64,000 nt of DNA. It comes from Podarcis filfolensis. Taxonomy: Eukaryota. The notes below the pieces were generated by a model that saw only the letters and a program-made list of their open reading frames with translations, ran no database searches and was not told where the DNA came from. Made by a program: the position numbers and the translations under genes. Below are positions 2,186-30,951 of the stretch, piece by piece (position 1 is the stretch's first letter; the number at the start of each line of letters is the position of its first letter). The stretch lies in the NCBI GenBank assembly GCA_964270895.1, contig OZ185441.1; one strand, given 5' to 3'.

Positions 2186-2224
2186 TGCAGTTCCTTGAGT
2201 GGTCCTCTAAGTGTCAGTGTTGGC
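2186..2224 (+). promoter_or_regulatory. Pcdh CSE / CTCF site (CAGT variant)
   Basis: TGCAG at 2186; core AAGTGT-CAGT-GTTGGCC with CAGT at 2215 (29-bp spacing); 283 bp upstream of the ATG. Confidence 0.75.
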
Positions 2225-2497
2225 CAGTATGACAGCCAGAGAGAGGATAGAGATCCATTGATGCTTCCTGGACTGTAGTAACTCCCATCCCTGCTATTCA
2301 GATCAGGCCAACTGAAGAGCACAGAGACAGGGAACTCTTACAGAGAAGGAAAAATCTCTTTTGCTTTGCACAAATATAAGAATAAGGCAGTTTATTCTTC
2401 CTCAGTGATACCTCATGTTGTTTCCTTCATCACTGTGAGAGCTTGAGCATAGGAAACTGAGAAAAGGAAGCAGCCTGTTTTTGAGAGAACCAGCCAG

Positions 2498-4918
2498 ATG
2501 GAGAGAAGGCACCCAGGGAATGGCAGGGCACTCACAAGGCAAGTACTGCTTCTCTCTCTATTGTCTTTTACCTGTTGGGCTGCATCAGAGCAGATTCATT
2601 ATTCAACCCCTGAGGAGATGGCAAAGGGTTCTGTTGTGGGGAACCTCGCCAAGGACCTGGGACTGAGCACCAAAGAACTAAAACATCGCAATCTGCACAC
2701 TGTGTCTGTGGCTAAAATGCAGCATTTCAGTATCAATGCAGAGAATGGAAACCTCTATGTAAATGACAGGATTGATAGGGAGGGGATATGTGGCAAAAAT
2801 CCAAATTGCTTTGTTAATTTTGAAGTTGTGGTGGAAAACCCTTTGAATATTTTTCATGTACTAGTGGAAATCCAGGATGTTAATGATAATGCACCCCAAT
2901 TCCTCAATGATAATATCAGCTTGGAGACAGGCGAACTAACTTTGCCAGGCACTCGATTTCTCCTTGGGAAAGCAGAAGATCCTGACATTGGGATGAACTC
3001 TCTCCAGGATTACCAGCTGAGCTCCAATCAGTATTTCTCTTTGGAAGTTAGAGAAAGGAAAGATGGAAATAAATATGCAGAACTGGTGCTACAGAAATCT
3101 CTTGATCGAGAAAGTGAACAGACCCTTCACTTGGTTATTACCGCTATGGATGGGGGGGAACCCAGAAAAACGGGGACTGCCCAGATATGGATTAATGTCC
3201 TAGATGCCAATGACAACCCGCCTGTTTTCACTCAAGAGGTATACAAGGTCAGTTTATCTGAAAATGTTCCTGTTGGGTCACTTGTTCTCCAGGTTGCAGC
3301 CTCTGATAAGGATGAAGGTACAAATGCCCAAATCAGGTATCATTTTAGTAACATACCAGCAAGTGCCGAACGGAAATTCAAGCTGGATCCCATCAGTGGT
3401 AGAATCACTCTTCTGGAGCAACTGGATTTTGAGGACGACGATGAATATACTATGACAGTTGCTTCAAAAGATGGAGGTGGGTTGATGACACATTCTAACA
3501 TTGAGCTAAGGGTTCATGATGAGAATGATAATGCCCCGGATGTGACCTTAGCCTCCATGTTCAGTCCTGTTCCTGAAGATTCTCTGCCAGGGACAGTTAT
3601 TGCTCTGATCAATGTAAATGACAGAGATAGTGGAGATAATGGAAAGGTCACTTGCTATTTACAGGATGATTTACCCTTCAAAATTCTTCCCTCATCTAAC
3701 AATTACTTCAAGCTCCAGACAGACAGTCTCCTGGACAGAGAAATAGCTCCTGCATATAATATTACAATCACAGCCACTGATAAAGGAACTCCGCCTCTTT
3801 CCACACACAAAACAATCTCACTACAGATCTCAGATATCAATGATAATGCCCCTACATTTCAGAGATCAACCTACAGCATCTATGTGCCAGAAAACAATCC
3901 TTCAGGTGCCTCCATTTTCACCATCAAAGCCTCTGATCCCGATGTGGACCAGAACTCACGGATCACATACTCCATCCTCAACAGCAACATCGAGGAGCTT
4001 CCCATCTCCTCCTATATTTCCATTAATTCAGAGACCGGCACCATCTATGCCCAGAGATCCTTTGACTATGAACAATTCAGAGAGTTTCGGGTGCAAGTGA
4101 AGGCCCAAGATGGGGGTTTTCCCCCTCTCAGCAGCAATGTGAGCGTCAGGGTGTTTGTTCTTGACAGGAATGATAACAGCCCTCGTATCCTGTCCCCCTC
4201 ACAAGAAGCCAAGGGCTCAGCCTTGTTTGAGATGGTGCCTCGTTCGGCCGAGGCAGATTATCTTGTCACCAAGGTGGTGGCCGTGGATGCAGATTCTGGA
4301 CACAACGCCTGGCTCTCCTACCACCTGACTCAGGCCACTGAGCCGGCACTCTTCACGGTTGGTTCTCATACTGGAGAGATCAGGACAGCCAGGGCCTTTG
4401 TGGAGAGAGACGCTGTGAAACAGAGACTGGTCATTATGGTGAAGGATAACGGGCAGCCGTCTCTCTCGGCCACCATGACTCTGAACCTGGTGTTTGCTGA
4501 GAACTTTCAGGAGGCCCTTCCGGAAATGAAGAGGCAACCCAGCAGCTCGGAGTATCAGTCTGACCTGCAGTTCTACTTGGTGCTGGCCTTAGCTGTGATC
4601 TCCTTCATGTTCCTCTTGACTGTGATTCTGGCCGTTACAATGAAGCTCCGTCAATCAGGGCACCCCAGGTTCCTACAGTGCTTTGGTCCTGTTCCCCATT
4701 CCAAGAATGGTGCCATCTTCCCACCCAAATTTGAAGATGGGACTTTGCCCTATTCCTACCAGCTGTGTCTGTCTTCTGAAACCAGGAAGAATGAGTTTGC
4801 CTTCCTGACACCCAATGTTCAGATGGTAGACAATATTGTTAGCAGTGAGAAACCTGATGTGCCTTTTACAGGCAACATTGGAAACAATTTTCATTCTGAG
4901 ATGGCTAATGGTGAAGAG
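2498..4918 (+). CDS. Protocadherin gamma-B-like variable exon (B1-type, copy 1)
   Basis: ORF with signal peptide, six cadherin repeats (DRE, DxNDNxP, AxDxG motifs), [17 protein letters not shown] and gamma-B-type tail ([16 protein letters not shown]). Phase-0 donor GAG|GTAAGG at 4919 after 807 codons; the unspliced ORF runs on to 5038. Confidence 0.93.
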
Positions 4919-6356
4919 GTAAGGTTTGTTCTCTGTATTTACATGTGTGGTACACTCTGTAGTTCTTTACCATTAAGTGACATTGCAATGCAACCTTTTA
5001 TACTGCAGGTGTACCTGCCTTTTTCAGTCTTTAGTTAGTTTTTCATATAGAAATCAATAGGTGGGGCTTTATTTTTTATGTTCATTTTAATTATTTATTA
5101 GCTTTCTATACTGCCTTTCATCCAAAGATCACATGGCAGCTTGCAATATAAAAGCTCTCATGTGTCATCATCTTTCCTATCTGTTCTAAGTAGCTGAGGC
5201 TAAACCACCTGGTGCAATTAGCCATTTCGTAGTCAGTTGGGGTATCGCATTTTCTACTTTCAGGGGATATTGCAATTTTTTGTTCTTTGTTTTGCTGGTG
5301 CATTCTTCAACATTTGACACAATAATAGTGTATCAATAGTCAATGTATACTGGATTGTCCACACATCATTTTTCTTTATTACTTGTTTTGAGCTGCCTCC
5401 CCAGTGTTATTGCATTTTTGAAGAGAACAGCTGTCATTGCATTAGTCCTTAGCACAGAGCGAGGTAACAAAATCTAAACTAGGTAATAAGATTTACATAA
5501 ACTTACATGAAAAATAGCACTACTTGCTAGTTAAACTATTGCCATTTGTAGGGGCACTACTGTATGATGAAAGCGGGACAAAGAATAAACCAGAGCATTG
5601 GTGTTATAAAAAGTTGCAGGATTTCAGCAGGAAGATATGGGACACTCACTCACATTAGTCACAAAGCGGCTTATTGTACCATAAATAACACAGTAGAACA
5701 TCACAAGCACAATAAAAATCATATAAAATAATAAACAAATCATCAGTAAAGTAAAACAACCACCTTTTAAAATACACTTTTAACAAAACAAGTTTAAAAA
5801 TAGGCTAAAGTCATATTATAAAATTCACAAAGCATTACAGCTCTCATAGTCCACAAAACAATATCAAGAACATTAACAAAGAACCAAAAACAAAATAAGC
5901 ATTCATACATCATCATGAGTCACAATAAAAATGGCATGGGGGGGGCTTATGGTTTACTTAAATCTCCCTAAAGCTAGGCTGGTTATAAATCTCTTTTTTT
6001 CAAGATTTGTTTGGGGGGGTGGGGTTGGTTACACACATACACACACAACGCACATGTATACCTTGCATAAAGTACGTTGTGACATGATGATCTAAGTACC
6101 TTGTGTTTTTTGGCATCAATTTGACTCAAGAATGGACAACTACAACATTCACCCAGCTATTACTATTACTATTGCTATTACTATTACAGTTATTACTATT
6201 ACTATACTATTATTATTATCACCCAATATAGTGTATCTGTATCGTTTTTAACCTGTAGTGAGCTGTAGCAATCTGGATTATGTTATAAATTGATTTTAAT
6301 CTAGTACTAGGCTGCTTATATTTACAAGTCTGAATAGGTTGCCTATAGTTTATATT

Positions 6357-6923
6357 GAAGATCATTGTAATACACACCCGCACCCACACCCCCGGTGGTT
6401 CAGATACAGAATTTCCCTGTTCCATTCAATAGCAAGAATTGGGTTCCTCTCATTAAATTGTTGGCATTTAATTGAACATTGGCTGCAACATGTAACCCAA
6501 TATTTTAATACAGGACTTCATCTGTAATGTGGATCCAACATTTTTTGTGCATCTTTGAACTCCACAGAAAATGCATTTGCTTTAATTTTTTGGAGATGTA
6601 AATGGTTGTGCATGTTCTCAATGCTGCCTCTGTGGACAGTTGGGAAAAACATTGTACAAAGTACTTTGACATAATGGTTCAGATCTAGAGTTTCCCTGTT
6701 TCATATACCAGTGAGGATTGGATTTCACTGATCAAATTGTTGGTATTTAATTGAGCACTGGATGCAATGCTTAACCCATTGTTTTAATGTAGGAGGTCAT
6801 GTGTAATGTGGATGCAACCTTTTTATGTGTATCTTTGAACTCCACAGAAGACGCTTTTGCTTTAATCTTTTGGAGGTGTAAATTGTGCAGCATGTTCTCA
6901 ATGCTGCCTCTGTGGACAGTTGG
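6357..6923 (+). repeat. Diverged tandem duplication, period about 285 bp
   Basis: 6405-6642 aligns to 6685-6923 (TTTCCCTGTTTC..AAATTGTTGG..TCTTTGAACTCCACAGAA..ATGCTGCCTCTGTGGACAGTTGG). Confidence 0.8.
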
Positions 6924-8220: not shown

Positions 8221-8223
<3 letters not shown>

Positions 8224-9033: not shown

Positions 9034-9072
9034 TGCAGTTCTCTGCTTCAGACTCACAGTGTCACTGTTGGA
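9034..9072 (+). promoter_or_regulatory. Pcdh CSE / CTCF site (CACT variant)
   Basis: TGCAG at 9034; CAGTGT-CACT-GTTGGAC with CACT at 9063 (29 bp); 257 bp upstream of the ATG. Confidence 0.75.
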
Positions 9073-9319
9073 CAAGGCGGCAATCCAAGGGCAGCTGAAG
9101 TTCCACTGATGCTTTCTGCAGGGAGATCTCTTTGTCCCAAACTGCACATCGGGAATACCAGCAGACGCTGGAACAAACGTTTCAGCTGAGAAAGAAAAAA
9201 GAAAACACTGCAGCATATACAAATTAAGCCAAAGGATCCAGTTCTTTTTTTACTGGGCAAAAAAATCTCCTGTCTTGGTGGAAATCTGAAATCCTGTGCT
9301 CATCAAAGAGAAGAGGAAA

Positions 9320-11749
9320 ATGAATATGAGAGGAATCCTTCATGGAGAGAGCTTTCAAACATCAGGGAGGTATATAACACTTCTGATATTTTCATCTTTG
9401 TTCTGTGGAGCAGTTTTGGAAGAGGTTCACTATTCCATCCCTGAGGAGATGGCAAAGGGGTCTTTGGTGGGAAATCTTGCCAAGGATCTAGGACTGAATG
9501 CCAGAGACCTGAAGAACAGAAACCTGCATATCCTTTCTGAAGGTAAAAAGCCATATTTCACTATCAGTGCACAAAATGGAAACCTGTATGTAAATGAAAG
9601 GATAGATCGTGAGGAAATATGTGGGGACAGTGTACGCTGTCTGATTAATTTTGAAGCTGTGGTTGAAAATCCTTTGAATGTTTTCCATATTATTGTAGCA
9701 ATTCAGGACATTAATGATAATATGCCACAGTTTTTAAATGAAATCATGAGGCTTGAAATTGTTGAATCCACATTACCAGGTACAAGATTTCATACTGGGA
9801 AAGCTGAAGATCCTGATATTGGGACTAATTCTCTCCAGAATTACCAGCTAAGTTCAAATCACTATTTCATTCTAGAGATTCGACAGGGAGAAGATGGCCA
9901 TAAATATGCAGAATTGGCGTTGCAGAAACCTTTGGATCGGGAAAGTGAGCACACGCTTCAGTTGATCCTTACGGCCCTGGATGGGGGTGAACCCAGAAAA
10001 ACTGGGACTGCCCAGATATGGATTAATGTCACAGATGCCAATGACAACCCACCAGTCTTCACTCAAGAGGTTTATACAGTTAGCCTGAGGGAAAATTCCC
10101 CTGTGGGGTCCCCAATACTCCAAGTAAAAGCCTCTGATAGAGATGAAGGTCTGAATGCCCAAATTCATTATACATTTAGTAATATTCCCAAAAGAACCTA
10201 CCAAAAATTTGACCTAGTTCCACAAAGTGGAACCATTACAATTAAGGAAGCGCTTGACTTTGAGGAAACAGAGATGTACACTATGACCGTTGAAGCAAGA
10301 GATGGAGGAGGATTAGCGGCTCATTGTAATGTCAATATAAAGATTCTAGATGAGAATGACAATGCTCCAGAGATCATTCTGACCTCCTTATCTAGTCCAG
10401 TTCCTGAAGACTCTGTTTCCGGAACAGTAATAGCTCTCATCAACGTAAAGGATAGGGATTCTGGAGAAAATGGAAAGATCACCTGCCACTTACAAAGTAA
10501 TGTACCATTTAAAATAGTGTCAACATCTAAGAACTACTATAAAATCCTCACAGACAGTCCTTTGGACAGAGAAAAAGCCTCAGGATACAACATCACAATC
10601 TCGGCCACCGACAAAGGTAGCCCCCCTCTCTCCTCCAACAAAACCATCTCCCTGCAGATTTCAGACATCAATGACAACCCCCCTGCCTTTGAAAAATCAA
10701 CCTACAGTGTCTTTGTGCCAGAAAACAATCCCTCAGGTGCCTCCATTTTCTCCATCAAAGCCACAGACCCGGATCTGGACCGCAACTCACGTATCACTTA
10801 CTCCATCCTCAACAGCAACATGGAGGAGCTGCCTCTCTCCTCTTACGTCTCCATCAACTCTGAGACGGGAACTATCTATGCACAGCGCTCCTTTGACTAT
10901 GAGCAATTCAGGGAGTTTCAGATCCAAGTGAAGGCCCAAGATGGCGGCTCTCCCTCTCTCAGCAACAACGCCACCATGTGGGTGTACATTTTGGATCAGA
11001 ACGATAACAGCCCTCGTGTTCTGTATCCTTTCCCGGGTGTTGAGGGCTCTGCCTTGTTTGAGATGGTTCCTCACTCAGCAGAGCCAGGCTACTTAGTGAC
11101 CAAAGTGGTGGCTGTGGATGCGGACTCTGGGCACAATGCCTGGCTCTCTTACCAAGTGCTGCAGGCCACAGAGCCGGCCCTCTTCACCATTGGGACCCAC
11201 ACAGGAGAGATCAGGACGTCACGAGCCCTTCTGGAGAAAGATGCTGTGAAACAGAAGCTGGTCATCTTGGTGAAGGACAATGGAAAGGCTCCACTCTCAG
11301 CTACTGTGGTCCTCAACCTTGTGGTTGCTGAGAACTTCCAAGAGGCACTTCCAGAAATGACTAGGCAATCCAGTGACACAGAGCATCATTCTGACCTCCA
11401 GTTTTACTTGGTGCTGGCTTTGGCATTGATCTCATTTTTATTCCTCCTGACGGTGATACTGGTCATTGTCATGAAACTTCGACAATCAGGAAATCCCAAA
11501 TTATTCCAATGCTTTGAACCTAATGCTTTTTCTAAGGCGCAGGTCATATTTCCACCAAACTATGAAGAAGGAACTTTACCTTATTCCTACCAACTCTGCC
11601 TATCGTCAGAGATGAGGAAAGAGCAGATCTCTTTCCCGAAATCCCATATCCAGGTGGCAGAAAACTTGCTATGCAATGATAGCTCTCAGGTGGTTCTTGT
11701 GGATGGCAACTGTGGGGATGCCAGTGCCAAAGAGGAGGTTGGTGAGCAG
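9320..11749 (+). CDS. Protocadherin gamma-B-like variable exon (B2-type, copy 1)
   Basis: First in-frame ATG at 9320 (the ORF-track start at 9296 is GTG). Six cadherin repeats, [17 protein letters not shown], tail [16 protein letters not shown]. Donor CAG|GTAAGC at 11750 after 810 codons, phase 0. Confidence 0.93.
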
Positions 11750-13531
11750 GTAAGCTTTGCTTTCAGAAACTGTGATGTTGGCATTACAACCTTGTTCCTT
11801 GTATGAGCATAACTAGTATTTTTAGCTGTCTTCCTCTCAACTGCCTAATTTGCTAAATGAGAGAACTAAAAAAAATCAAATTATATTACTAGCACCAGCT
11901 GTTCAGACTGTAGAAAACTTTTTTTACAAGTAGTCTACAAATTGCAATGACAGAGGCAAATTCAATGCTAAGTCTGAAAATGACGTTCAGGTGAGTCTTC
12001 ATGAATTATGGAATTTATATCCTTTTCTTCCTTCTAGTAATTTTCTTCCTGTAGATTATTAAAATATCACTATCATTATATACAGTAGTTATTTTTTAGT
12101 TCCTCCTAGAGGTTAAATATGTGGATTTTTACTTCGTTCACTCACAAAGTTTATTCATCCTGTTGTGATTTGAGTTAACTGAAAAATGTATAAAACATGA
12201 ATGCTTCCTATTTGTTCATAGTAGATCTTTTGGACTGTTTTGAACTTCTCTGGAAGATTCATGTAGAAAGAACTTGTATGAAATGCAGAATGCTCAGAAA
12301 AGCGCAACTAAGATGGTCAAGTGGGTGGAACAACTTCTTTATTCGGAAAAAAGTGCAATGCTTAACAATATTTAGTATAGATCAAAGACAAGGGAGAAGC
12401 GATATGAGAGAGCTAGTCCTTCCAGTGCCACATTTCAACCACATCTACAGGACAGCAAGTAATTTAAGTGGCAGGTGCAAGGCAACCAATGCTAGGATGC
12501 AACATTTTTGTGGGGCATGTCCTGAAATGAAAAGTTCCAGGTGGATATAATAAGGGAAGCTGAAATAATAACAGGATACACTTTATCAACGGTTATTCTT
12601 ATTGTTTTATTCAGCTGTATTAAGGGTTTAATACTAGCAGAGTATTAGTCCAAGACTTATTAACTATAGCAAGAACAACTATTTGGTATAAGTTGAGTGG
12701 AGTGTGTGGTTAAGAACACCAGCTTTACAGGAGTGGAGTATGGGATATTTTATCTATGGTTAAACTAATGAATATGGTAAGAGTCAGAGTGGGGAGACTG
12801 ATAAAATTGTGGTGGAAAAATAGAACATTTTCATACTTAATTTGTGCAATAAGGTTCAAGATAATACACTGTTAGAAACTTTATAAATCAGTATGCTCTC
12901 TTTGAGTGTATAATATAAAACTATTGAAACTTGTATCCAGCCATTATTTTTATTTATACAGAACAATCACACATACTTTACACATTTTAATAAATAAATA
13001 ACTTATGGAAATTGCTCCCACAAAAAGCTGTGATGGCCACTAACTTGGGTGCCTTATAGACAACTTCATGGTGGCCGCAAGTCGTGCTGACTGTATCCCG
13101 TCAAGTACTAGAAGTAGGATGCCTCCAAATGCCACAGTGGGAGACAAGTTGCTTAACAAGAAAGGCCTTGGGTCTGATCCAGCAAGGCTCTTCTTATGTT
13201 GTTACATTTTAATGAAAGGAATTGTGTGCCCTGATGTTGTGTGATAGACTGACAGAAAAAGGACTATAAGCATGTTAAAGTGAGGCAATGCTCTGCCGGT
13301 GATCCCTTGGGTATGTAGCTTCCATTCAAGGGGGTTCAATTTCAGTGGGATAGACATCAAGGCAAAACATGTTTTCAATAGGCTGTATATCTCCAGACTG
13401 GGTTGTGAGTCTTGTGAGCTGTTATGCGCAGCAATCAGAGGAGCTGTTGTTTTAATGTGTACAAACTGAAAGCAAATAACTTGAAATTTGCTAAAGGGAA
13501 ACTACTGTACATTGCACAACATGGTTTTCCT

Positions 13532-13571
13532 TGCAGTTCCTTGAGTGGTCCTCTAAGTGTCAGTGTTGGCC
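13532..13571 (+). promoter_or_regulatory. Pcdh CSE / CTCF site (CAGT variant)
   Basis: TGCAG at 13532; CAGT at 13561 (29 bp); identical to the 2186 site. Confidence 0.75.
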
Positions 13572-13842: not shown

Positions 13843-16263
13843 ATGGAGAGAAGGCACCCAGGGAATGGCAGGGCGCTCACAAGGCAAGTACTGCTTCTCT
13901 CTCTATTGTCTTTTACCTGTTGGGCTGCATCAGAGCAGATTCATTATTCAACCCCTGAGGAGATGGCAAAGGGTTCCGTTGTGGGGAACCTCGCCAAGGA
14001 CCTGGGACTGAGCACCAAAGAACTAAAACATCGCAATCTGCACACTGTGTCTGTGGCTAAAATGCAGCATTTCAGTATCAATGCAGAGAATGGAAACCTC
14101 TATGTAAATGATAGAATTGATAGGGAGGGGATATGTGGCAAAAATCCACTTTGCTTTGTTCAGTTTGAAGTTGTGGTGGAAAACCCTCTGAATGTTTTCC
14201 ATGTCACAGTAGAAATCCAGGATGTTAATGATAATGCACCCCAATTCCTGAATAGCAATATCGATTTAGAGATCCTTGAATCCACTCTGCTAGGCACTCG
14301 ATTTCTCCTTGGGAAAGCGGAAGATCCTGACATTGGGATGAACTCTCTCCAGGATTACCAGCTGAGCTCCAATCAGTACTTCAATTTGGAAGTTAGAGAG
14401 AGAAAAGATGGAAATAAATATGCCGAATTGGTGTTGCAGAAATCTTTGGATCGGGAAAAAGAACAAACCCTTCACTTAGTACTTACCGCAATGGATGGGG
14501 GTGAGCCTAGGAAAACTGGAACAGCCCAGATACGGATTAATATCACTGATGCCAATGACAACCCTCCCATTTTCACTCAAGAGGTGTACAAGGTCAGTTT
14601 GCGTGAAAATGCTCCTATTGGATCCACGGTGCTCCAGGTCATAGCCTCTGATGATGATGAAGGTTCATATGCCCAAATCAGGTATTATTTCAGCAACATA
14701 CCAGCAACTTCCCAAGAGAAATTCAGTCTAGATCCCATTGGTGGCGTAATCACCCTCTTGGAGCGACTGGATTTTGAGGACAACGATGAATATACTATGA
14801 CGGTTGCTGCAAAAGATGGTGGGGGATTGGTGACTCATTCCAATATTGAGATAAGGGTTCTTGATGAGAATGATAATGCCCCGGATGTGACCTTAACCTC
14901 CATGTTCAGCCCAGTTCCTGAAGATTCACCATCTGAAACCTTAATTGCTCTGATCAATGTAAATGACAAAGATGCCGGTGAAAATGGAAAAGTTACCTGC
15001 TATTTAAACAGTGATTTGCCCTTCAAGATTATTTCCTCATCTAACAATTTCTACAAACTTCTGACAGTCAGCCCTTTGGACAGAGAAAAAGCTCCTGCAT
15101 ATAATATTACAATCACAGCCACTGATAAAGGAACTCCACCTCTTTCCACACACAAAACAATCTCACTACAGATCTCAGATATCAATGATAATGCCCCTAC
15201 ATTTCAGAGATCAACCTACAGCATCTATGTGCCAGAAAACAATCCTTCAGGTGCTTCCATTTTCACCATCAAAGCCTCTGATCCCGATATGGATCAGAAC
15301 TCACGGATCACATACTCCATCCTCAACAGCAACATCGAGGAGCTTCCTATCTCCTCCTATATCTCCATTAATTCAGAGACCGGCACCATCTATGCCCAGA
15401 GATCCTTTGACTATGAACAATTCAGAGAGTTCCATCTGCAAGTGAAGGCCCAAGATGGGGGTTCTCCCCCTCTCAGCAGCAATGTGAGCGTCAGGGTGTT
15501 TGTTCTTGACAGGAATGATAACAGCCCTCGTATCCTGTCCCCCTCACAAGAAGCCAAGGGCTCAGCCTTGTTTGAGATGGTGCCTCGTTCGGCCGAGGCA
15601 GATTATCTTGTCACCAAGGTGGTGGCCGTGGATGCAGATTCTGGACACAACGCCTGGCTCTCCTACCACCTGACTCAGGCCACTGAGCCGGCACTCTTCA
15701 CGGTTGGTTCTCATACTGGAGAGATCAGGACCGCCAGGGCCTTTGTGGAGAGAGACGCTGTGAAACAGAGACTGGTCATTATGGTGAAGGATAACGGGCA
15801 GCCGTCTCTCTCGGCCACCATGACTCTGAACCTGGTGTTTGCTGAGAACTTTCAGGAGGCCCTTCCGGAAATGAAGAGCCAACCCAGCAGCTCGGAGTAT
15901 CAGTCTGACCTGCAGTTCTACTTGGTGCTGGCCTTAGCTGTGATCTCCTTCTTGTTCCTCTTGACTGTGATTCTGGCCGTTACAATGAAGCTCCGTCAGT
16001 CAGGGCATCCCAGGTTCCTACAGTGCTTTGGTCCTGTTCCCCATTCCAAGAATGGTGCCATCTTCCCACCCAACTTTGAAGATGGGACTTTGCCCTATTC
16101 CTACCAGCTGTGTCTGTCTTCTGAAACCAGGAAGAACGAGTTTGCCTTCCTAACACCCAATGTTCAGATGGTAGACAATATTCTTGGCAGTGAGAAACCT
16201 GCTGTGCCTTTTACAGGCAACAGTGGAAACAATTTTCTTTCCGAGATGGCTAATGGTGAAGAG
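13843..16263 (+). CDS. Protocadherin gamma-B-like variable exon (B1-type, copy 2)
   Basis: Paralog of the 2498 exon with the same architecture. Donor GAG|GTAAGG at 16264 after 807 codons, phase 0. Confidence 0.93.
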
Positions 16264-16773
16264 GTAAGGTTTGTTCTCTGCAGTTACATGCATGGTACAC
16301 TCTGTAGTTCTTTACCATTAAGTGACATTTCAATACAACCTTTTATACATCATATGTTCTTGCCTTTTCATTTTTCAGACTTTAGTTAATTTTCCATCTA
16401 GATTCATGAATCATCATCTTCTTTATATATAGTAAACAGCTGAGGCTAAACTACCTGTTGCAGGTATAGTCTATTTTCTCCATTGCATTTTGAGATTTCC
16501 AGTTCAGTCCTAACCATATCTACCCAGATGTGAGTTCTGTTGAATTCAGTGTGACTTTCTGTCAGGTAAGAGTGCTTAGGATTTAAGCTTTGGAATTTGA
16601 ATAGTGGGAACATGAAATTAAATGAAGTGAAATGGATATATATATTGCTTATTTAATCTTATGAGTGGGTGTGGAATGTGCCGACGTTTTTATTATATAA
16701 TTGCGGAGGTGTACTTCTTTCTGTATGGCAGTTGTGTGCTATTGGGTTCAATGGGGCTTACTCCCAGATTGTG

Positions 16774-19976: not shown

Positions 19977-20015
19977 TGCAGTTCTCTGCTTCAGACTCAC
20001 AGTGTCACTGTTGGA
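19977..20015 (+). promoter_or_regulatory. Pcdh CSE / CTCF site (CACT variant)
   Basis: TGCAG at 19977; CACT at 20006 (29 bp); identical to the 9034 site. Confidence 0.75.
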
Positions 20016-20268
20016 CAAGGCGGCAATCCAAGGGCAGCTGAAGTTCCACTGATGCTTTCTGCAGAGAGATCTCTTTGTCCCAAACTGCACATCGGGAATA
20101 CCAGCAGACGCTGCAACAGCAGACGCTTTCAGCTGAGAAAGAAAAAAGAAAACACTGCAGCATATACAAATTAAGCCAAAGGATCCAGTTCTTTTTTTAC
20201 TGGACAAAAAAATATCTCCTGTCTTGGTGGAAATCTGAAATCCTGTGCTCATCAAAGAGAAGAGGAAA

Positions 20269-22698
20269 ATGAAGAGAAGAGAAATCCTTCATGGAGAGAG
20301 CTTTCAAACATCAGGGAGGTATATAACACTTCTGATATTTTCATCTTTGTTCTGTGGAGCAGTTTTGGAAGAGGTTAACTATTCCATCCCTGAGGAGATG
20401 GCAAAGGGATCTTTGGTGGGAAATCTTGCCAAGGATCTAGGACTGAATGCCAGAGACCTGAAGAACAGAAACCTGCATATCCTTTCTGAAGGTAAAAAGC
20501 CATATTTCACTATCAATGCTGAAAATGGAAATCTGCATGTGAATGAGAGGATAGATCGTGAGGGAATGTGTAGAGAGAGCACACACTGCATTATTGATTT
20601 TGAAGCTGTGGTTGAAAAGCCATTGAATGTTTTCCATGTAAGTGTAGCAATTCAGGACATTAATGATAATGCCCCACAATTCATAAAGGGCAATATTGGG
20701 CTTCAAATAATTGAATCCACATTGCCAGGTGCCAAATTTCTTCTTGGGAAAGCTCAAGATCCTGATATTGGGATTAATTCTCTCCAAAATTACCAGCTAA
20801 GTTCAAATCACTATTTCACTGTAGAGATTCGACAGAGAGAAGATGGCCATAAATATGCAGAATTGGTGTTGCAGAAACCTTTGGATCGGGAAAGTGATCA
20901 CTCCCTTCAGTTGATCCTTACGGCCCTGGATGGGGGTGAGCCCAGAAAAACTGGGACTACCCAGATATGGATTAACATCACAGATGCCAATGACAACCCA
21001 CCAGTCTTCACTCAAGAGGTTTATACAGTTAGCCTGAGGGAAAATTTCCCCGTGGGGTCCCCAATACTCCAAGTAAAAGCCTCTGATAGGGATGAAGGTC
21101 TGAATGCACATATTAGTTATATTTTTAATAACATCCCAGAAACAGCCCACCAATTATTTGAACTAGATCCACAAAGCGGAACAATTACAATTAAGGAAGC
21201 TCTTGACTTCGAAGAAACAGAGAGGTACAGTATGACCGTTGAAGCAAGAGATGGAGGAGGATTAGTGGCTCACTGTAATGTTGATATAAAGATTATAGAT
21301 GAGAATGACAATGCCCCAGAGATCATTCTGGCCTCCTTATCTAGTCCGATTCCGGAAGACTCTGTTTCTGGAACAGTAATTGCTCTCATCAACGTAAAGG
21401 ATAGGGATTCTGGAGGAAACGGAAAGATTACCTGCCACTTACAAAGTAATGTTCCATTTAAAATAGCATCAATATCTAAGAATAACTACAAAATCCACAC
21501 CGACAGTCCATTGGACAGAGAAAAAGCCTCAGGATACAACATCACAATCACGGCCACCGACAAAGGTAGCCCCCCTCTCTCCTCCAACAAAACCATCTTC
21601 CTGAAGATTTCAGACATCAATGACAACCCCCCTGCCTTTGAAAAATCAACCTACAGTGTCTTTGTGCCTGAAAATAATCCCTCAGGTGCCTCCATTTTTG
21701 CCCTCAAAGCCTCGGACCCAGATCTGGACCGCAACTCACGTATCACTTACTCCATCCTCAACAGCAACATGGAGGAGCTGCCTCTCTCCTCTTATGTCTC
21801 CATCAACTCTGAGACGGGAACTATCTATGCACAGCGCTCCTTTGACTATGAGCAATTCAGGGAGTTTCACATCCAAGTGAAGGCCCAAGATGGCGGCTCT
21901 CCCTCTCTCAGCAACAACACCACCGTGTGGGTGTACATTTTGGATCAGAACGATAACAGCCCTCGCGTTCTGTATCCTGTCCCGGGTGTTGAGGGCTCTG
22001 CTTTGTTTGAGATGGTTCCTCACTCAGCAGACCCAGGCTACCTCGTGACCAAAGTGGTGGCTGTGGACGCTGACTCTGGGCACAATGCCTGGCTCTCCTA
22101 CCAAGTGCTGCAGGCCACAGAGCCGGCCCTCTTCACCATTGGGACCCACACAGGAGAGATCAGGACGTCACGAGCCCTTCTGGAGAAAGATGCTGTGAAA
22201 CAGAAGCTGGTCATCTTGGTGAAGGACAATGGGAAGGCTCCGCTCTCAGCTACTGTGGTCCTCAACCTCGTGGTTGCTGAGAACTTCCAGGAGGCACTTC
22301 CAGAAATGACTAGGCAATCCAGTGACACAGAGCATCATTCTGACCTCCAGTTTTACTTGGTGCTGGCTTTGGCATTGATCTCATTTTTATTCCTCCTGAC
22401 AGTGATACTGGTCATTGTCATGAAACTTCGACAATCAGGAAATCCGAAATTATTCCAATGCTTTCAACCTAATGCTTTTTCTAAGGCACAGGTCATATTT
22501 CCACCAAACTATGAAGAAGGAACTTTACCTTATTCCTACCAACTCTGCCTATCGTCAGAGATGAGGAAAGAGCAGATCTCTTTCCCAAAACCCCATATCC
22601 AGGTTTCAGAAAACTTGCTATGCAATGATAGCTCTCAGGTGGTTCTTGTGGATGGCAACTGTGGGGATGCCAGTGCCAAAGAGGAGGTTGGTGAGCAG
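20269..22698 (+). CDS. Protocadherin gamma-B-like variable exon (B2-type, copy 2)
   Basis: ATG at 20269 (the track start at 20245 is GTG). Paralog of the 9320 exon. Donor CAG|GTAAGC at 22699 after 810 codons, phase 0. Confidence 0.93.
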
Positions 22699-23049
22699 GT
22701 AAGCTTTGCTTTCAGAAACAGCATTGCTCCTTATAGGAATAAAACTAATATTTTTATTTTGTTTTACTATATAAGGGGGCTAGATTCCGCTCAGAAGCTC
22801 CATTCTTGGATGACAGCAAAAAAAACCCAAAAGCACAATGCTTCTAGGACTAGAGGTAATATAGTTACCAAGCCAGTGACAGCCTCATCCATAATAAATT
22901 TCTTTATTAAATTTACATCCTGCCATTTTCCCTGTAGGAGCCCACAAATGATCTAATCCCCTTTTAAAGCCATCTAAGTTGGTGGTGATCACTGTATCTT
23001 GTGTTAACAAATTCCATAGTGGAACTATAATTTCATAGTTTAAGCACCT

Positions 23050-23135
23050 AAAAGGTAAAGGTAAAGGTAAAGGTACCCCTGCCCGTATGGGTCAGTCGTG
23101 TCCGACTCTGGGGTTGCGCGCCCATCTCGCTTAAG
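23050..23135 (-). mobile_element. Sauria SINE 3' fragment
   Basis: (AAAGGT)n, the reverse of the (ACCTTT)n tail, followed by AGTCGTGTCCGACTCT. That 16-mer is shared with the BovB copy at 28321-28336. Confidence 0.75.
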
Positions 23136-24057
23136 ATGTTCCTTACCTCCAGAATTTGGCAGATTGTAAAGATTCAACTGTAAGGACTTGTAAGGAAACT
23201 ATAATCAAAAGCACAGAAAACAGCACTTCTGAAAGACAGAGGGAGCAGACGCTAGATGAATACTGTTATACGAGTCAGCATTGTGATGCTGTGGAGCAAA
23301 AGAGCTGGACCATGTGTAGTTTGCAATTACAGGAGAACTCTTGGAGTAGCCAGATTCCTACTACGGACCAAGAAGAACTTGTCTTCTGTTCTGGACACAT
23401 GCATTCCATACATGCTGATTGACAGACATCTAACAACTTAGGAAAGATTCAAAAAAGAATTATTCCAGCCCTTCTGCTGAAGAAAATAATTATAATAAAT
23501 AAATTTTCAGAAAATGTTTAATTAAGCATCCATTAGTTTGCATTTTTCATATATATATATTTTTAGAATGTTTTACTTTGAAATTATTTTACAAGTTCCC
23601 TCCCCTCACCCGCCCTCATAATGTTTTGTGAGGAATTCCTAGTAGATGCTGTGATGTATTAAGCCTTGAAAAGACACACATATTTCCAGTAAAAATGTTT
23701 TTAAAATACTATATATATTTAGGAGTCAATGTTCCAAGAGCTAGGGAAAATGCATGGAAACATAAGATTTTCATGATTTCCATCTAACATTAGGATTCCT
23801 GTGTACAAATTTCCATACTTGTTTATGCGGTAACAGTGGAGTTGCGCATTACATACCTATGTAGAAAACTTAATCTTACCAAGGGAGGTTTAACTGACTT
23901 GTTGGTTATTGGGGTTCTCTCCTTTTCTAGCGAATAAGAATCCACTTCTACGCTTACAAAGGATAACTTGGTGTTTCATGATAAATTAAAATAAATACTC
24001 ACTTGGTTTTGTTTATCTGTGAAACAGTGTGCACATCAGCAGCATTCCAGCTTATGT

Positions 24058-24428: not shown

Positions 24429-24467
24429 TGCAGTTCCTGGCTGTGACTCTGAGTGTCGCTGTTGACC
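24429..24467 (+). promoter_or_regulatory. Pcdh CSE / CTCF site (canonical CGCT)
   Basis: TGCAG at 24429; GAGTGT-CGCT-GTTGACC with CGCT at 24457 (28 bp); 199 bp upstream of the ATG. Confidence 0.85.
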
Positions 24468-24655: not shown

Positions 24656-27067
24656 ATGGCAACAGCAAAGTATCCTCAAGCTTGCAAAAGGAGAGTTTTC
24701 TTTTTATTTCTGTTTGCTAACATCTGCCAAGCCATCACCAGACAGATCCAGTACTCCATTCCTGAAGAAACTGAGAGAGGCTTTTTGGTGGGGAATATTG
24801 CGAGGGATCTTGGACTGGATGCAAAGGAGCTCTCAGATCGTGGAATTCGCATTGTTTCCCCAGGTAGGACTCAGTATTTTGCTTTGAATTATAAGAGTGG
24901 CCATTTGCACACCACAAAGAGAATAGACAGAGAGGAGATCTGTGGTCAGGAAGAGAAATGTATTTTGAATTTTGAGATTATAGTTGAAGATTCAATGAAA
25001 ATTTATGGAGTTGAAGTGGAAGTCACAGATATCAATGACCATGCGCCCACCTTCCCGTCAGAGAAATTAGTGATAAATATCAGCGAGAATGCAGCTTTGG
25101 GGTCCCAGTTTCCCCTCTTGGAAGCTCAAGATCCTGACTTAGGAAACAATTCTCTACAGGGGTACAAACTCAGCAACAATAGCCATTTTTCTTTGATTCT
25201 CCAAACATCAGTTAAGGGCAAACAATATGGAAAAATTGTGTTGGAAAGACCTCTGGACCATGAAAAAGAAGCAGTTCATAATCTTATCATTACCGCATAT
25301 GATGGTGGTGATCCAGTCAGAAGTGGCACTGCACAGCTGCACATTACAGTCCTGGATGTGAATGACAATGCACCAGTTTTTAGCCAACGCATTTATGAAG
25401 TGAGCGCAAGGGAGGATTTACCTATAGGAACCATTGTGGTTACATTAAAAGCTACTGATTTGGATGAAGGGACCAACAAAGAAATGACATTTTCATTTGC
25501 AAAAACCACGGAAAAGATTTCCCAGATATTTCACTTAGATACACACACAGGTGAGATAACTCTCATAGGAAGCTTAGACTACGAAGACTCTGCTCTTTAT
25601 GAAATGGAGGTCCAAGTCCATGATAGTGGAGGTCTATTTGACACTTCAACTGTCATAGTATTTGTTACTGATGTAAATGACAATGCACCCAAACTGGAAA
25701 TAACTTCACTTATCAGCTCCATCCCTGAGAACTCTCCACCAGCGACTGCAATAGCCCTTTTGAATGTGCAAGATGAGGATTCGGCAGAGAATGCAGAAGT
25801 CACATGCTCTATCCCCAGCAACCTCCCCTTTCTACTGACAAAAGCCTATGGCAACTACTACAGTTTGGTGACAGCAAGAGCCCTGGACAGAGAGCAGGTG
25901 GCAGCCTACAACATCACTGTTACAGTCACGGATCACGGGACCCCTCCACTTTCCACATCAATTATTATTCCACTTGAGATTTTAGACACAAACGACAACC
26001 CTCCACACTTCCTGCAATCCATTTATACTTCTTATTTAATGGAGAACAACCCAAGAGGGGCCTCCATATTTTCCCTGAAGGCTGATGATCCAGACTGTGG
26101 AGAGAACTCCAGAGTCACTTATTCCATCATTGAGCACAACATCAGTGACTCCCCAGTATCTTCCTTCCTCTCCATTAACTCTGAGACTGGGATTGTCTAT
26201 GGCCTGATCTCTTTTGATTATGAAGAGATGAGGGAGATTAAGTTCCTGGTCAAGGCCCAGGATGGAGGTTCTCCACCACTCAGCTCCAGCGTCTCAGTCA
26301 CTCTCTTCATCCTGGACCAGAATGACAATGCTCCCCAAATCCTTTACCCTTCCCCTCCCACTGACGGCTCCACAGGGATAGAGCTGGCCCCTCGCTCCTC
26401 TGAGCCAGGCTACCTGGTCACTAAGGTGGTGGCCGTGGATGCAGACTCTGGCCAGAATGCCTGGCTCTCCTACCAGCTGATCAAAGCCACCGAGCCAGGG
26501 CTCTTCACTCTGGGGCTCCACACGGGAGAGATCAGGACCGCCCGCTTCTTTCTGGAGAAAGATGCCCTCAAGCAAAGCCTGGTGGTTTTAGTGAAGGACA
26601 ATGGGCAGCCACCTCTCTCTGCTTCAGCCACTCTGACTGTGGTGCTGGCTGACGCCATCCCTGCAGTCCTCTCAGACCTGAGCAGCATCTCAGCTCCTGT
26701 AGAGCCTCCGTCTGACCTCACCTTCTACCTGGTCCTTGCAGTGGCTTTTGTCTCCTGCTTGTTCTTCATCTTCCTCCTTGTGTTACTGGCAGTTAAACTT
26801 CATAGGTGGAGATATTCACAGTCTGGAACTGAGAAGTTCAGTGGAGTTCCAGTTTCCCAGTTTGTGGGGATTGACGGAGTCCGAGCATTTCTGCACTCCT
26901 ACTGCCAGGAGGTTTCTCTCACTACAGACTCTAGGAAGAGCAATTTCGGATTTCCCAAGGGAAATATTTCCAATACTATGACCAGTCACCAGCCCTGTGA
27001 GATAAATGATCCCTTTCTCATTGCTGAAGAGATTGCAAACAGTAATGGGGATTCAGCCAATATACAG
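24656..27067 (+). CDS. Protocadherin gamma-A-like variable exon
   Basis: ATG at 24656 (MATAKYPQ...). Six cadherin repeats, [19 protein letters not shown], and the gamma-A hallmark tail [28 protein letters not shown]. Donor CAG|GTGAAG at 27068 after 804 codons, phase 0. Confidence 0.92.
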
Positions 27068-28293
27068 GTGAAGTCTTGCTATCAAATCAAAGGTTTTTCG
27101 CTTTATATTTTCAGTTAGACGTTAATGCCGTTTATATTATTTGTTTTGCACTTGTTCTGAAGAAATGGAACTGGAGACATATTCTCTCATTTATACTTGT
27201 TCTCCTCAGATAAAATGAGGTTTGGGAGTTCACATAGTTCACTTTTTGTATATGTGGTTGTTTCTGTCACAAGCAAATGCATGTAGAAATAGGAGAATTG
27301 TAAACAGCTTGTCCCACAAGAGCTTAAGCGCTTAAAGAGCAACCATGAGACAAATATTTGAGATATTCATATATTTTCTTGTTCAGCAATTTTTGCATGA
27401 TTGTGATGGTTATCTTGTTTTATTTGAATGCTTCTTTCGGAGCTTCTTTCTTGACCTTCTTGCCTCTTAGAAAGGTTATTTAGTTCTCAAAGAATAGTAT
27501 CTGTGGGAAATCCAGGCTTCCCAAAATATTTGAACTTTGATTTACTGCCCTCTAATTCTGTGTCTGAAATAGTATATGTCTTTACTCATTGGATAAATCA
27601 GTTGTGTGTTTACTAAACAGGGTCAATAATCTATCTAATTAGTATTATCCAGCCTTATGAGCAGTAGGTAACAGCTCAGGTGTTTCTCAGCCTAGTTTTG
27701 TTAGATGTTTTAAAAAACTTGAGATACCAGGAATTAAACCTGTATACTAAGTAAGAACTCATCTAGTTTATTGGCCAAGTATGTGAGCTGAAAGGCATGA
27801 AATTTGTAATTTGAATTTTGGCTCTTTTTGGTGACATTAAATGATTTATTGCATTTAAAAATGGAAATAGATCCCTTGGATGGGGCAGCAAGAGCAGGGC
27901 TGCAAGAAAAATCCTACCCACTTCGTTATTTGCACTGAGAAGAAGAAGAATGGTCCCATTGATACTGTCTCTGCACCCGTGGTCATGATCCTGCTCCCCC
28001 AGTGACATCTATTTCCATTAAGAATGCATTCTCATTCAATGTAATAAAACATTTAAAGCCACATATACTTTTGCCCTCATCAGGCATGTCACTTTTTCTC
28101 ATTCTCAGCTGCAAATCTGTAATACCGGTGCAATAAATAACACTGGCCTAGCACTCAGAAGTGCCATATAATGGCCAAGTATTGTCTCTGCCAGTGGGGA
28201 ATGGCTTCCTGCCCTTTCCCTTCCCTTGGTTCAGTCTCCCAGAATTTCATCATATAGAAAACAATGGTGTGTTAAATATTAGTGTAGTAGGAT

Positions 28294-30532: not shown

Positions 30533-30562
<30 letters not shown>

Positions 30563-30563
<1 letters not shown>

Positions 30564-30665
30564 TTCCAGTAGCACCTTAGAGACCAATTAAGTTGGTTAC
30601 TGGTATGAGCTTTCGTGTGCATGCACATGAAAGCTCATATCAATAACAAACTTAGTTGGTCTCTA
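30563..30665. mobile_element. Penelope-like terminal relic forming an 88-bp palindrome
   Basis: Imperfect inverted repeat at 30578-30665 centred on TGTGCA|TGCACA, with GAAAGCTC on both strands, next to an A27 run (30534-30560). The Penelope assignment is inferred from motif similarity. Confidence 0.55.
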
Positions 30666-30911
30666 TTATGAGTGTAGTTTATTTTATTTTTGTTTTATTT
30701 ATATTGCTGTTTCGGACCACCCTGGAAGCCTTTGTTGCTGAAGGTGTGGACAATAAAAGTAATAAGTAATAAATATGCTAAACAAAGGTGAAACAAGGAA
30801 AAGTTTTTCAAATGCCCCACTTGCAGTTGGCTGAAGAGAAAGTTCACATTGTAGAAACATGTGCATTCTTTCAGTTCCATCTTTCTATGCTATGGTGAAC
30901 ATGGTTTTCCT

Positions 30912-30951
30912 TGCAGTTCCTTGAGTGGTCCTCTAAGTGTCAGTGTTGGCC
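30912..30951 (+). promoter_or_regulatory. Pcdh CSE / CTCF site (CAGT variant)
   Basis: TGCAG at 30912; CAGT at 30941 (29 bp); identical to the 2186 and 13532 sites. Confidence 0.75.

What the first reader, a model, noticed from the sequence alone, without database searches (positions are those of the whole stretch)
2186..30951. Five of eight alternate Pcdh-gamma promoters have CpG-free CTCF sites
Seen: all nine promoters keep TGCAG 28-29 bp before the CSE core. The CGCT box is replaced by CAGT (2215, 13561, 30941) or CACT (9063, 20006) in five of them, and those sites contain no CG at all. The sites at 24457, 37218 and 45076 keep one CpG, and the C3 site has five. No alternate exon has a CpG island. 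Established: in mammals, methylation of the CSE blocks CTCF and demethylation drives stochastic promoter choice; CAGT and CACT still fit the 3' end of the CTCF consensus (GGCRSY). Inference: these five sites may bind CTCF regardless of methylation, so this lizard cluster could mix methylation-gated and ungated promoters, a different choice logic from mouse.
Basis: partly seen in the sequence, partly recalled or inferred. Interest (0 to 1): 0.72.

Follow-up and report, generated by a model that had tools for sequence, protein, structure and literature searches.

The report
CpG-free CTCF promoter sites, lizard protocadherin-gamma
Five of eight alternate protocadherin-gamma promoters in this wall lizard have a conserved CTCF-type element with no CpG, which traces to two old mutations and to a CpG loss shared by all squamates sampled, so the mammalian idea that methylation gates promoter choice may not carry over unchanged.

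Summary
Nine protocadherin-gamma variable exons each have a CSE promoter element. It is made of TGCAGTT, a match to the CTCF upstream motif, followed 28-29 bp later by the box. The box is CAGT in V1/V3/V6, CACT in V2/V4 and CGCT in V5/V7/V8/C3.

The five CpG-free sites are not five events. They come from two CpG-to-CpA transitions plus one C-to-G change in two paralog lineages. All three changes predate the Podarcis/Lacerta/Zootoca splits.

CACT boxes also occur in gecko, amphisbaenian, iguanian and snake gamma-B promoters. None occurred in the turtle, tree-shrew or pigeon promoters sampled.

The larger pattern is that squamate alternate exons and promoters sit at background CpG levels (o/e 0.14-0.29). 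Turtle, mammal and bird exons are 0.63-0.82.

The CpG-free sites are strongly conserved, and one such exon is transcribed in a close relative.

The proposed mix of gated and ungated promoters is weakly supported. The box lies at CTCF core positions 12-15. There CpA is a normal alternative to CpG, and published in-vitro work finds CpG methylation there not inhibitory.

The scan noted the same pattern before in this genome: followed up for the alpha cluster, first-reader notes for beta and upstream gamma-B.

The parts
2186..2225 (+). V1 CSE: TGCAGTTCC upstream motif, 9-nt spacer, core CCTCTAAGTGT[CAGT], then GTTGGCC. No CpG.
   Evidence: orthologous Zootoca site L002:22312 is also CAGT
2498..5038 (+). 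V1 gamma-B-type variable exon ORF (846 aa). The 3' splice donor was not mapped.
9034..9073 (+). V2 CSE, box CACT at 9063. No CpG in the element; one CpG at +44 (GGCGG).
9320..11806 (+). V2 gamma-B-type variable exon ORF
13532..13571 (+). V3 CSE, box CAGT at 13561. No CpG. The element is identical to that of V1.
13843..16389 (+). V3 variable exon ORF, paralog of V1 and V6 (91-92% DNA identity)
19977..20016 (+). V4 CSE, box CACT at 20006. The element is identical to that of V2.
20269..22956 (+). V4 variable exon ORF. Sense-strand RNA reads of a close relative cover about 20201-22800. None lie over the CSE or the downstream intergenic DNA.
24429..24467 (+). V5 CSE (gamma-A-type), box CGCT at 24457, one CpG, 8-nt spacer
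   Evidence: the Lacerta ortholog L001:3334 has an identical element
24656..27118 (+). V5 gamma-A-type variable exon ORF, counted from the first ATG
30912..30951 (+). V6 CSE, box CAGT at 30941. No CpG. The Lacerta ortholog also has CAGT.
31225..33687 (+). V6 variable exon ORF
37189..37228 (+). V7 CSE, box CGCT at 37218, one CpG. V7 is the sister paralog of V2/V4, which lost this CpG.
   Evidence: the Lacerta ortholog L001:16906 has an identical element
37448..39934 (+). V7 variable exon ORF
45047..45086 (+). V8 CSE, box CGCT at 45076, with a second CpG at +44
45213..47783 (+). V8 divergent gamma-B-type variable exon ORF
58863..58901 (+). V9 (gamma-C3) CSE, box CGCT at 58891. Seven CpGs in the first 45 nt, inside a true CpG island (o/e 1.02, GC 0.71).
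   Evidence: the TGCAGTTA(A/T)TGG form is shared with the pigeon and vole C3 promoters
59158..61671 (+). V9 gamma-C3 variable exon ORF

Best explanation
These are genuine CSE-type promoter elements of Pcdh-gamma variable exons. Each is a composite CTCF site on the sense strand: an upstream ZF9-11 motif (TGCAGTTCC), an 8-9 bp spacer, and a non-canonical core whose last four bases are the 'CGCT box' at core positions 12-15.

In squamates, alternate gamma promoters and exons are not CpG islands. They have decayed to background CpG levels, as expected for DNA that is methylated in the germ line. This step is inferred.

Within the conserved element the one remaining CpG sits at C12-R13. Here G-to-A (CpG to CpA) is a tolerated substitution, so it was fixed at least twice in the ancestry of this window. 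One event lies in the V2/V4 lineage. The other lies in the V1-like lineage, where a further C-to-G change at S14 produced CAGT. Tandem duplication then raised the count to five.

The elements stayed under purifying selection and still head transcribed exons.

CpG methylation cannot act directly on these five elements. V1, V3 and V6 have no CpG from at least 105 bp upstream of the element to the ATG. But position 12-13 is not the methylation-sensitive CTCF contact, and all eight alternate promoters are CpG-poor. The expected functional difference between CGCT and CACT/CAGT promoters within the cluster is therefore small. The meaningful difference is between squamates and mammals, turtles and birds.
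For: Anatomy and positions.

Published motif information:
- The upstream motif CTGCAGTTCC is bound by ZF9-11 (PMC12885311).
- ZF3 contacts the CGCT box, and Pcdh promoter CTCF sites are in forward orientation (PMC7811963).
- CpG or CpA is normal at positions 12-13, and methylation there is not inhibitory (PMC10484683, PMC6222495).

Two origins: the maximum-likelihood tree puts V1/V3/V6 with the Lacerta CAGT exon in one 100/100 clade, sister to a Zootoca CACT exon. V2/V4 with a Zootoca CACT exon form a 100/99 clade, sister to V7 and its Lacerta ortholog, both CGCT. Synteny with Lacerta and Zootoca is at 88-93% identity.

Spread in squamates: outside the window, 20 squamate sites gave 10 CGCT, 8 CACT and 2 CAGT. 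Twelve turtle, tree-shrew and pigeon sites gave 11 CGCT and one degenerate TGCT.

CpG depletion is specific to exons and promoters. Squamate exons have o/e 0.14-0.29 against intergenic 0.11-0.26. Tupaia is 0.63 against 0.29, Chelonia 0.65 against 0.26, and Columba 0.82 against 0.41.

Conservation: across gecko-to-lacertid V1-like promoters, 23 of 41 element columns are invariant against 13 of 343 flank columns (Fisher p = 4.5e-17). C12 and T15 are invariant while positions 13 and 14 vary.

Expression: stranded RNA reads of a close relative cover the V4 exon (CACT promoter) at a mean depth of about 2.5-3. The V5 exon (CGCT promoter) is at about 0.8-1.6. There are no reads over the CSE or the intergenic DNA.

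In the forward register, the variant sites score no worse against the CTCF matrix than mammalian CSEs do.
Against: - CTCF binding is inferred from homology with mammalian CSEs.
- In every register the CSE core is a poor match to the canonical CTCF matrix (-12 to +5 bits, 9-12 of 15 IUPAC positions). The register rests on the upstream motif, on a spacing recalled from memory, and on one review sentence.
- The Wu-laboratory review states that methylation of the CGCT-box CpG precludes CTCF binding (PMC7811963). This conflicts with the in-vitro result for positions 12-13. If the review is right, the CGCT and CACT promoters would differ.
- The comparative sample is small: 1-4 promoters per species, chosen by similarity to V1.
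- The RNA reads come from another species of unknown tissue. Its own box sequence was not seen.
Confidence: 0.6

Rival explanations
1. One reading: one cluster holds two working classes of promoter. CGCT promoters are bound by CTCF only when unmethylated. CACT/CAGT promoters are bound regardless, so they are chosen more often or constitutively.
For: The five sites have no CpG. A review says methylation of the CGCT-box CpG precludes CTCF binding (PMC7811963). In human cell types, variable CTCF occupancy correlates with methylation at core positions 2 and 12 (cited in PMC10484683). V4 (CACT) shows somewhat higher read depth than V5 (CGCT) in two runs.
Against: In vitro, methylation at positions 12-13 slightly enhances affinity, and CpA is an accepted alternative there (PMC10484683, PMC6222495). 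The three CGCT alternates have just one or two CpGs in the element and CpG-poor surroundings. The depth difference is two-fold at most, from a bulk sample of another species with about 12% of each run read. V4 and V5 also belong to different subfamilies. The mammalian gating model is shown for alpha, not gamma (10.1101/360206).
Confidence: 0.15
2. Squamates as a clade choose alternate Pcdh promoters without CpG methylation, for example by heterochromatin marks or by CTCF/cohesin kinetics alone. Loss of the box CpG is one symptom of a changed mechanism, not mere tolerated decay.
For: Exon and promoter CpG is at background level in all eight squamate genera sampled, against 2-2.5 times the local background in turtle, mammal and bird. 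V1, V3 and V6 have CpG-free stretches of over 400 bp spanning the element and the 5' UTR. The C3 promoter in the same window keeps a full CpG island, so islands do persist in this genome. Scan notes report the same for alpha, beta and upstream gamma-B in this genome (unchecked).
Against: Each alternate exon still holds roughly 30-40 CpGs that could be methylated. Sequence-defined CpG islands under-predict unmethylated regions in cold-blooded vertebrates (my recollection, not checked). There are no methylation, chromatin or single-cell data. Sphenodon was not sampled, so the timing is open.
Confidence: 0.25
3. The CACT/CAGT elements no longer bind CTCF. These promoters run on other factors, or the exons are on their way to becoming pseudogenes.
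For: The CSE core is a weak match to the canonical CTCF matrix. Xenopus and zebrafish have CSEs without the CGCT box, and Xenopus has one gamma subgroup with a different motif altogether (PMC4978886).
Against: All five ORFs are intact. The element, including the upstream motif, C12 and T15, is conserved from gecko to lacertid. The variant sites score higher than the CGCT sites and the mammalian CSEs in the same register. The V4 exon is transcribed from just downstream of the element.
Confidence: 0.07

Closest known systems
Mammalian clustered-protocadherin CSE with CGCT box (Wu et al. 2001; CTCF site per Guo 2012 and Golan-Mashiach 2012, PMC3333863)
   Same: One element per variable exon, on the sense strand, about 130-310 bp before the ATG. 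It has the same ..CTCnnAGnGnCnnTGTTGRCCAA core and an adjacent upstream conserved block with fixed spacing (the 'SSE' of PMC3333863). It is present at C3. In the vole locus it is absent at C4 and C5, as published.
   Different: The box is CACT or CAGT in five of nine sites. The elements hold 0-1 CpG, against 2-4 in tree shrew and 2-3 in turtle. The surrounding promoters and exons are not CpG islands.
CGCT-less CSEs of zebrafish Pcdh-alpha (Noonan 2004) and Xenopus tropicalis Pcdh-alpha; weaker CGCT conservation in Xenopus gamma (PMC4978886)
   Same: These are precedents for CSEs that keep the flanking conserved bases but lack the CGCT box, so the box is not indispensable across vertebrates.
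   Different: Those are alpha clusters of a fish and a frog. Here it is amniote gamma-B promoters, with the mutational path visible (CGCT to CACT to CAGT) and CGCT paralogs side by side. Neither paper links box loss to CpG depletion of the exons.
Composite CTCF sites with the upstream CTGCAGTTCC motif (13-15% of CTCF sites; insulator class; PMC12885311, PMC10484683)
   Same: All nine sites have TGCAGTT(C/T/A)(C/T/A), located 8-9 bp before the inferred core on the same strand.
   Different: The core is far from consensus. A6-G7 is displaced by one base and G11 is T or C, so binding probably leans on the upstream motif. This holds for mammalian CSEs too.

Membership tests
Clustered-protocadherin CSE promoter element | Lies about 200 bp upstream of the start codon of a Pcdh variable exon, on the sense strand, one per exon | tested here: met
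   TGCAG-to-ATG distances are 134-313 bp for all nine exons, with no minus-strand copies
Clustered-protocadherin CSE promoter element | Conserved core of about 22 bp | tested here: met
   All nine sites match CTCnnAGnGnNNNNGTTGnnC at 10-11 of 11 fixed positions, as do turtle, tree-shrew and pigeon sites
Clustered-protocadherin CSE promoter element | CGCT box | tested here: not met
   CGCT is present in V5, V7, V8 and V9. It is CAGT in V1, V3 and V6 and CACT in V2 and V4. CGCT-less CSEs are already accepted as CSEs in frog and fish (PMC4978886).
Composite CTCF binding site | Upstream motif CTGCAGTTCC-like, 5' of the core on the same strand | tested here: met
   TGCAGTT is present in 9 of 9 sites. 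The motif is as published in PMC12885311.
Composite CTCF binding site | 15-bp core CCASYAGRKGGCRSY | tested here: inconclusive
Mammalian and turtle CSEs score the same or lower.
Composite CTCF binding site | CTCF occupancy in vivo or in vitro | not testable with these tools
   No lizard ChIP or EMSA data are available
Methylation-gated CTCF site | CpG at the methylation-sensitive contact (core positions 2-3, read by ZF7) | tested here: not met
   Positions 2-3 are CT in all nine sites and in every relative examined. The sensitivity of this position is per PMC10484683 and PMC6222495.
Methylation-gated CTCF site | Any CpG within the footprint | tested here: not met
   True of the five variant sites: V1, V3 and V6 have none, and V2 and V4 have none in the element and one at +44. 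V5, V7 and V8 have 1-2 and V9 has 7.
Methylation-gated CTCF site | Differential methylation that tracks expression in neurons | not testable with these tools
   No bisulfite data were laid on the window
CpG-island-type alternate Pcdh promoter/exon (mammalian type, PMC10463633) | CpG o/e of about 0.6 or more over the promoter and 5' exon | tested here: not met
   V1-V8 promoters have o/e 0.04-0.34 and their exons 0.23-0.33. V9 has 1.02 (promoter) and 0.60 (exon). Tupaia, Chelonia and Columba exons are 0.63-0.82.

The most novel reading that the evidence does not exclude
At or near the origin of squamates, the whole clustered-protocadherin array changed from CpG-island-type alternate promoters, kept in mammals, turtles and birds, to CpG-poor promoters. 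Some have CTCF elements that cannot be CpG-methylated at all. Stochastic isoform choice in lizards and snakes would then run on a mechanism that does not use promoter CpG methylation.
Probability: 0.25. Interest if true: 0.75.

Novelty: new variant of a known kind. Interest (0 to 1): 0.55.

Why it matters
Clustered protocadherins are the standard example of stochastic promoter choice that gives each neuron an identity. The mammalian model links that choice to CpG methylation of CTCF sites embedded in CpG islands.

Squamates offer a natural experiment. The conserved CTCF-type element and intact exons are still there, but the CpG islands are gone and, in many promoters, so is the last CpG of the element. 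CGCT and CpG-free paralogs sit side by side.

This lets the need for methylation be tested directly. The tests are CTCF mapping, bisulfite sequencing and single-nucleus isoform counts in a lizard brain. If choice is still stochastic there, promoter CpG methylation is not essential to the mechanism.

The held literature describes lizard Pcdh gene content but not its promoters (PMC2764143), and I found no report of this pattern.

Tried and rejected
1. Reverse-strand register. The reverse complement of CTGTTGGCC gives CCAACAG, a good CCASYAG half-site. I rejected it for three reasons: the 3' half then needs a one-base deletion; the published orientation of Pcdh promoter sites is forward (PMC7811963); and the upstream motif lies 5' on the sense strand at the expected spacing. 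In that register CAGT would also destroy the invariant G7, yet the CAGT element is conserved in three lacertid genera.

It does not pick out the CSEs, which score -3 to +6 bits. It is therefore useless as a membership test, and mammalian CSEs score just as low.

3. CpA-versus-TpG asymmetry as proof of selection on C12. No intact squamate promoter has TGCT, but there are just 2-5 independent events, so this is suggestive only.

4. Primary papers not held: Yin 2017, Wu 2001 and Guo 2012. Their content is cited only through the review PMC7811963.

5. The look-up of the lion gamma-B2 protein failed. The vole C3 locus gave no alternate promoter because of gaps. The mammalian alternate sample is therefore one species.

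6. The very high RNA depth at 23057-23136 is a repeat fragment, not a small RNA gene. There was no Rfam or tRNA hit.

7. First CSE scan template had an extra base and found nothing. It was corrected.

Full report
**What is in the window**

The window carries nine + strand ORFs of 820-903 aa. Six were scanned against Pfam, and each has the clustered-protocadherin layout of Cadherin_2, five Cadherin repeats and Cadherin_C_2.

V1 finds gamma-B-type proteins of lizards, at best 89-90% identity to Lacerta and Zootoca. V9 is 100% identical to Podarcis muralis PCDHGC3 and 60-61% to mammalian gamma-C3. The window is therefore the 3' part of the alternate Pcdh-gamma array plus C3 of a Podarcis wall lizard. 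Syntenic DNA of Lacerta agilis is 90-93% identical.

On a maximum-likelihood tree:
- V5 is gamma-A-type.
- V1, V3 and V6 form one gamma-B subgroup.
- V2, V4 and V7 form another.
- V8 is a more distant gamma-B.
- V9 groups with pigeon C3.

**The observation**

Every exon has one sense-strand element 134-313 bp before its ATG. The element is TGCAGTT(C/T/A), a spacer, then CTCnnAGTG(Y)C-box-GTTGRCC.

- The box begins 29 bp after the T of TGCAG in seven sites, and 28 bp after it in V5 and V9.
- The boxes are CAGT (2215, 13561, 30941), CACT (9063, 20006) and CGCT (24457, 37218, 45076, 58891).
- The five variant elements contain no CpG. V2 and V4 have one CpG 12 nt downstream of the box.
- V1, V3 and V6 have no CpG from at least 105 bp upstream of the element all the way to the ATG, a stretch of more than 400 bp.
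- Alternate promoters have CpG o/e 0.04-0.34 and alternate exons 0.23-0.33.
- The C3 promoter is a full island, with o/e 1.02 at GC 0.71.

**Independence**

The five sites are not five events. V1, V3 and V6 share 91-92% exon identity and identical elements. V2 and V4 share 93%.

On the tree, V1/V3/V6 and the Lacerta ortholog of V6, all CAGT, form a 100/100 clade. Its sister is a Zootoca exon with CACT. V2/V4 plus a Zootoca CACT exon form a 100/99 clade. Its sister is V7 plus its Lacerta ortholog, both CGCT. The Zootoca site orthologous to the V1 promoter by synteny is also CAGT.

The history is therefore two CpG-to-CpA transitions and one later CAC-to-CAG change. All predate the split of these lacertid genera. 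Tandem duplication did the rest: V1-V2 and V3-V4 repeat at about 11 kb.

**Beyond this lizard**

I fetched about 22-35 kb around gamma-B-like genes of nine other species and scanned them for the element.

| Group | Sites | CGCT | CACT | CAGT | Other |
|---|---|---|---|---|---|
| Squamates outside the window | 20 | 10 | 8 | 2 | - |
| Turtle, tree shrew and pigeon | 12 | 11 | 0 | 0 | 1 degenerate TGCT (turtle) |

- CACT occurs in Zootoca, Rhineura, Phrynosoma, Eublepharis and Candoia. The three Tiliqua sites are all CGCT.
- The 11 CGCT sites outside squamates are four from turtle, six from tree shrew and one from pigeon.
- On the tree, CACT needs 4-5 changes. Alternatively it was ancestral in one gamma-B subgroup, with two reversions.
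- Either way, the CpG-free form is old and widespread in squamates and was not seen outside them.
- The loci were chosen by similarity to V1 and the samples are small, so the proportions are rough.

**The larger pattern**

The elements of tree shrew and turtle hold 2-4 CpGs (for example GAGCGCCGCT). Squamate elements hold 0-1 (GAGTGYCRST), which reads as a decay series.

Exon CpG o/e compared with the local intergenic background:

| Taxon | Exon CpG o/e | Intergenic CpG o/e |
|---|---|---|
| Eight squamate genera | 0.14-0.29 | 0.11-0.26 |
| Tree shrew (Tupaia) | 0.63 | 0.29 |
| Turtle (Chelonia) | 0.65 | 0.26 |
| Pigeon (Columba) | 0.82 | 0.41 |

The backgrounds are alike, so the difference is specific to the variable exons and their promoters.

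A published analysis notes that mammalian Pcdh variable-exon promoters are flanked by prominent CpG islands (PMC10463633). The one paper on a lizard Pcdh cluster does not treat promoters or CpG (PMC2764143). Literature searches found no report of this pattern.

**Is the element still functional?**

I aligned V1-like promoters from gecko, snake, skink, amphisbaenian and lacertids. The element has 23 invariant columns of 41. The flanks have 13 of 343 (Fisher p = 4.5e-17). TGCA, the CCTC start of the core, C12 and T15 never vary. Positions 13 and 14 do.

Stranded RNA reads of a close relative (a species about 2-3% divergent) cover the V4 exon, which has a CACT promoter, from about 20201 to 22800. 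Mean depth is about 2.5-3. The neighbouring V5 exon, with a CGCT promoter, is at about 0.8-1.6. No reads lie over the element or the intergenic DNA, apart from a repeat fragment.

So a CpG-free promoter is active, and its transcripts start downstream of the element. The tissue is unknown, the species differs, and the depths do not measure choice frequency.

**How the element relates to CTCF**

- TGCAGTTCC matches the published CTCF upstream motif CTGCAGTTCC, which is bound by ZF9-11 and found in 13-15% of sites (PMC12885311).
- Pcdh promoter CTCF sites are in forward orientation, and ZF3 is said to contact the CGCT box (PMC7811963).
- With the 8-9 bp spacer seen here, the box falls on core positions 12-15 (C-R-S-Y). 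That this spacing is canonical is my recollection of the extended JASPAR motifs.
- The same holds for the tree-shrew and turtle elements, and the CAGT sites score highest.

Occupancy cannot be judged from the sequence. The variants do not make the fit worse.

**Methylation gating**

Structural and biochemical work on CTCF (PMC10484683, PMC6222495) reports the following:
- Either CpG or CpA can occupy positions 12-13.
- ZF4 and ZF3 accept unmethylated, hemimethylated and fully methylated CpG as well as CpA.
- Full methylation at 12-13 slightly raises affinity.
- The inhibitory site is positions 2-3, read by ZF7.

Positions 2-3 are CT in all nine sites here and in every relative examined.

Against this, the Wu-laboratory review says methylation of the CGCT-box CpG precludes CTCF binding (PMC7811963). 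Occupancy in human cells also correlates with methylation at position 12 (cited in PMC10484683). The primary papers were not available.

The demethylation-driven choice model was worked out for Pcdh-alpha, which has a second, exonic CTCF site with an antisense promoter. The authors note that beta and gamma promoters carry just a single CTCF site (bioRxiv 10.1101/360206).

**Conclusion**

A mix of gated and ungated promoters within this cluster is possible but not favoured. The CGCT alternates keep a single CpG at a position that may not gate binding, and all eight alternates are CpG-poor.

The better-supported and more interesting statement is comparative. Squamate alternate Pcdh-gamma promoters and exons have lost the CpG richness kept by turtle, bird and mammal. 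Loss of the box CpG, tolerated because position 13 accepts A, is part of that. Whether isoform choice in squamates still uses DNA methylation is open and now testable.

**Earlier scan notes, same genome (unchecked by me)**

- A followed-up finding on the alpha cluster reached the same squamate-wide reading (s1-302365).
- First-reader notes report CpG-free elements in upstream gamma-B promoters (s1-292321).
- First-reader notes report the same in beta promoters (s1-307144).
- One note reports a reverse-oriented CTCF site about 52 kb downstream (s1-302448).

They agree with this report but are not independent evidence.

Noticed in passing
window:23057-23136: An 80-bp stretch beginning with (GGTAAA)n and continuing ..CAGTCGTGTCCGACTCTGGGGTTGCG. 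It looks like a fragment of a lizard SINE (my recollection of the Sauria SINE). It collects enormous RNA and contig depth with loose ends on both sides, so it is a dispersed repeat, not a local transcript. There was no Rfam or tRNA hit.
   Followed up: partly
window:24340-24375: A (TA)n microsatellite of about 36 bp lies about 55 bp upstream of the V5 CSE. The reads tool skipped it as a repeat.
   Followed up: no
window:48183-48201, 56570-56588 and 12097-12115 (minus strand): The best canonical CTCF-core matches in the window (13.8-15.6 bits, matrix from memory) are on the minus strand. They lie just downstream of V8, 2.3 kb upstream of C3, and just downstream of V2. This is the opposite orientation to the promoter elements. 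They may be chance matches.
   Followed up: no
L001:14822-14880 and L001:15130-16241 (Lacerta agilis): Between the Lacerta orthologs of V6 and V7 lies a degenerate CSE with box TGCT. It is followed by exon remnants 70-87% identical to V5. This looks like a decayed gamma-A pseudo-exon. It is the only squamate TGCT box seen, and it is not attached to an intact ORF.
   Followed up: partly
window:2186-22956: V1-V2 and V3-V4 look like a tandem duplication of a two-gene unit. The CSE-to-CSE spacing is 11346 bp for V1-V3 and 10943 bp for V2-V4. A third V1-type copy (V6) stands alone after the gamma-A exon V5.
   Followed up: partly
L011:9746-9800 (vole), L010:15201-15260 (pigeon), window:58863-58901: The C3 promoter element has its own conserved form, TGCAGTTA(A/T)TGG...CTCTG(T/C)G(T/C)GCCGCTGT. 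Lizard, pigeon and vole share it. The vole C4 and C5 exons have no CSE, as published.
   Followed up: partly
L008:24558-24620 (Chelonia mydas): One turtle site has box TGCT (CpG decayed on the other strand) and GGCAG instead of TGCAG. No long ORF follows it within the locus.
   Followed up: no
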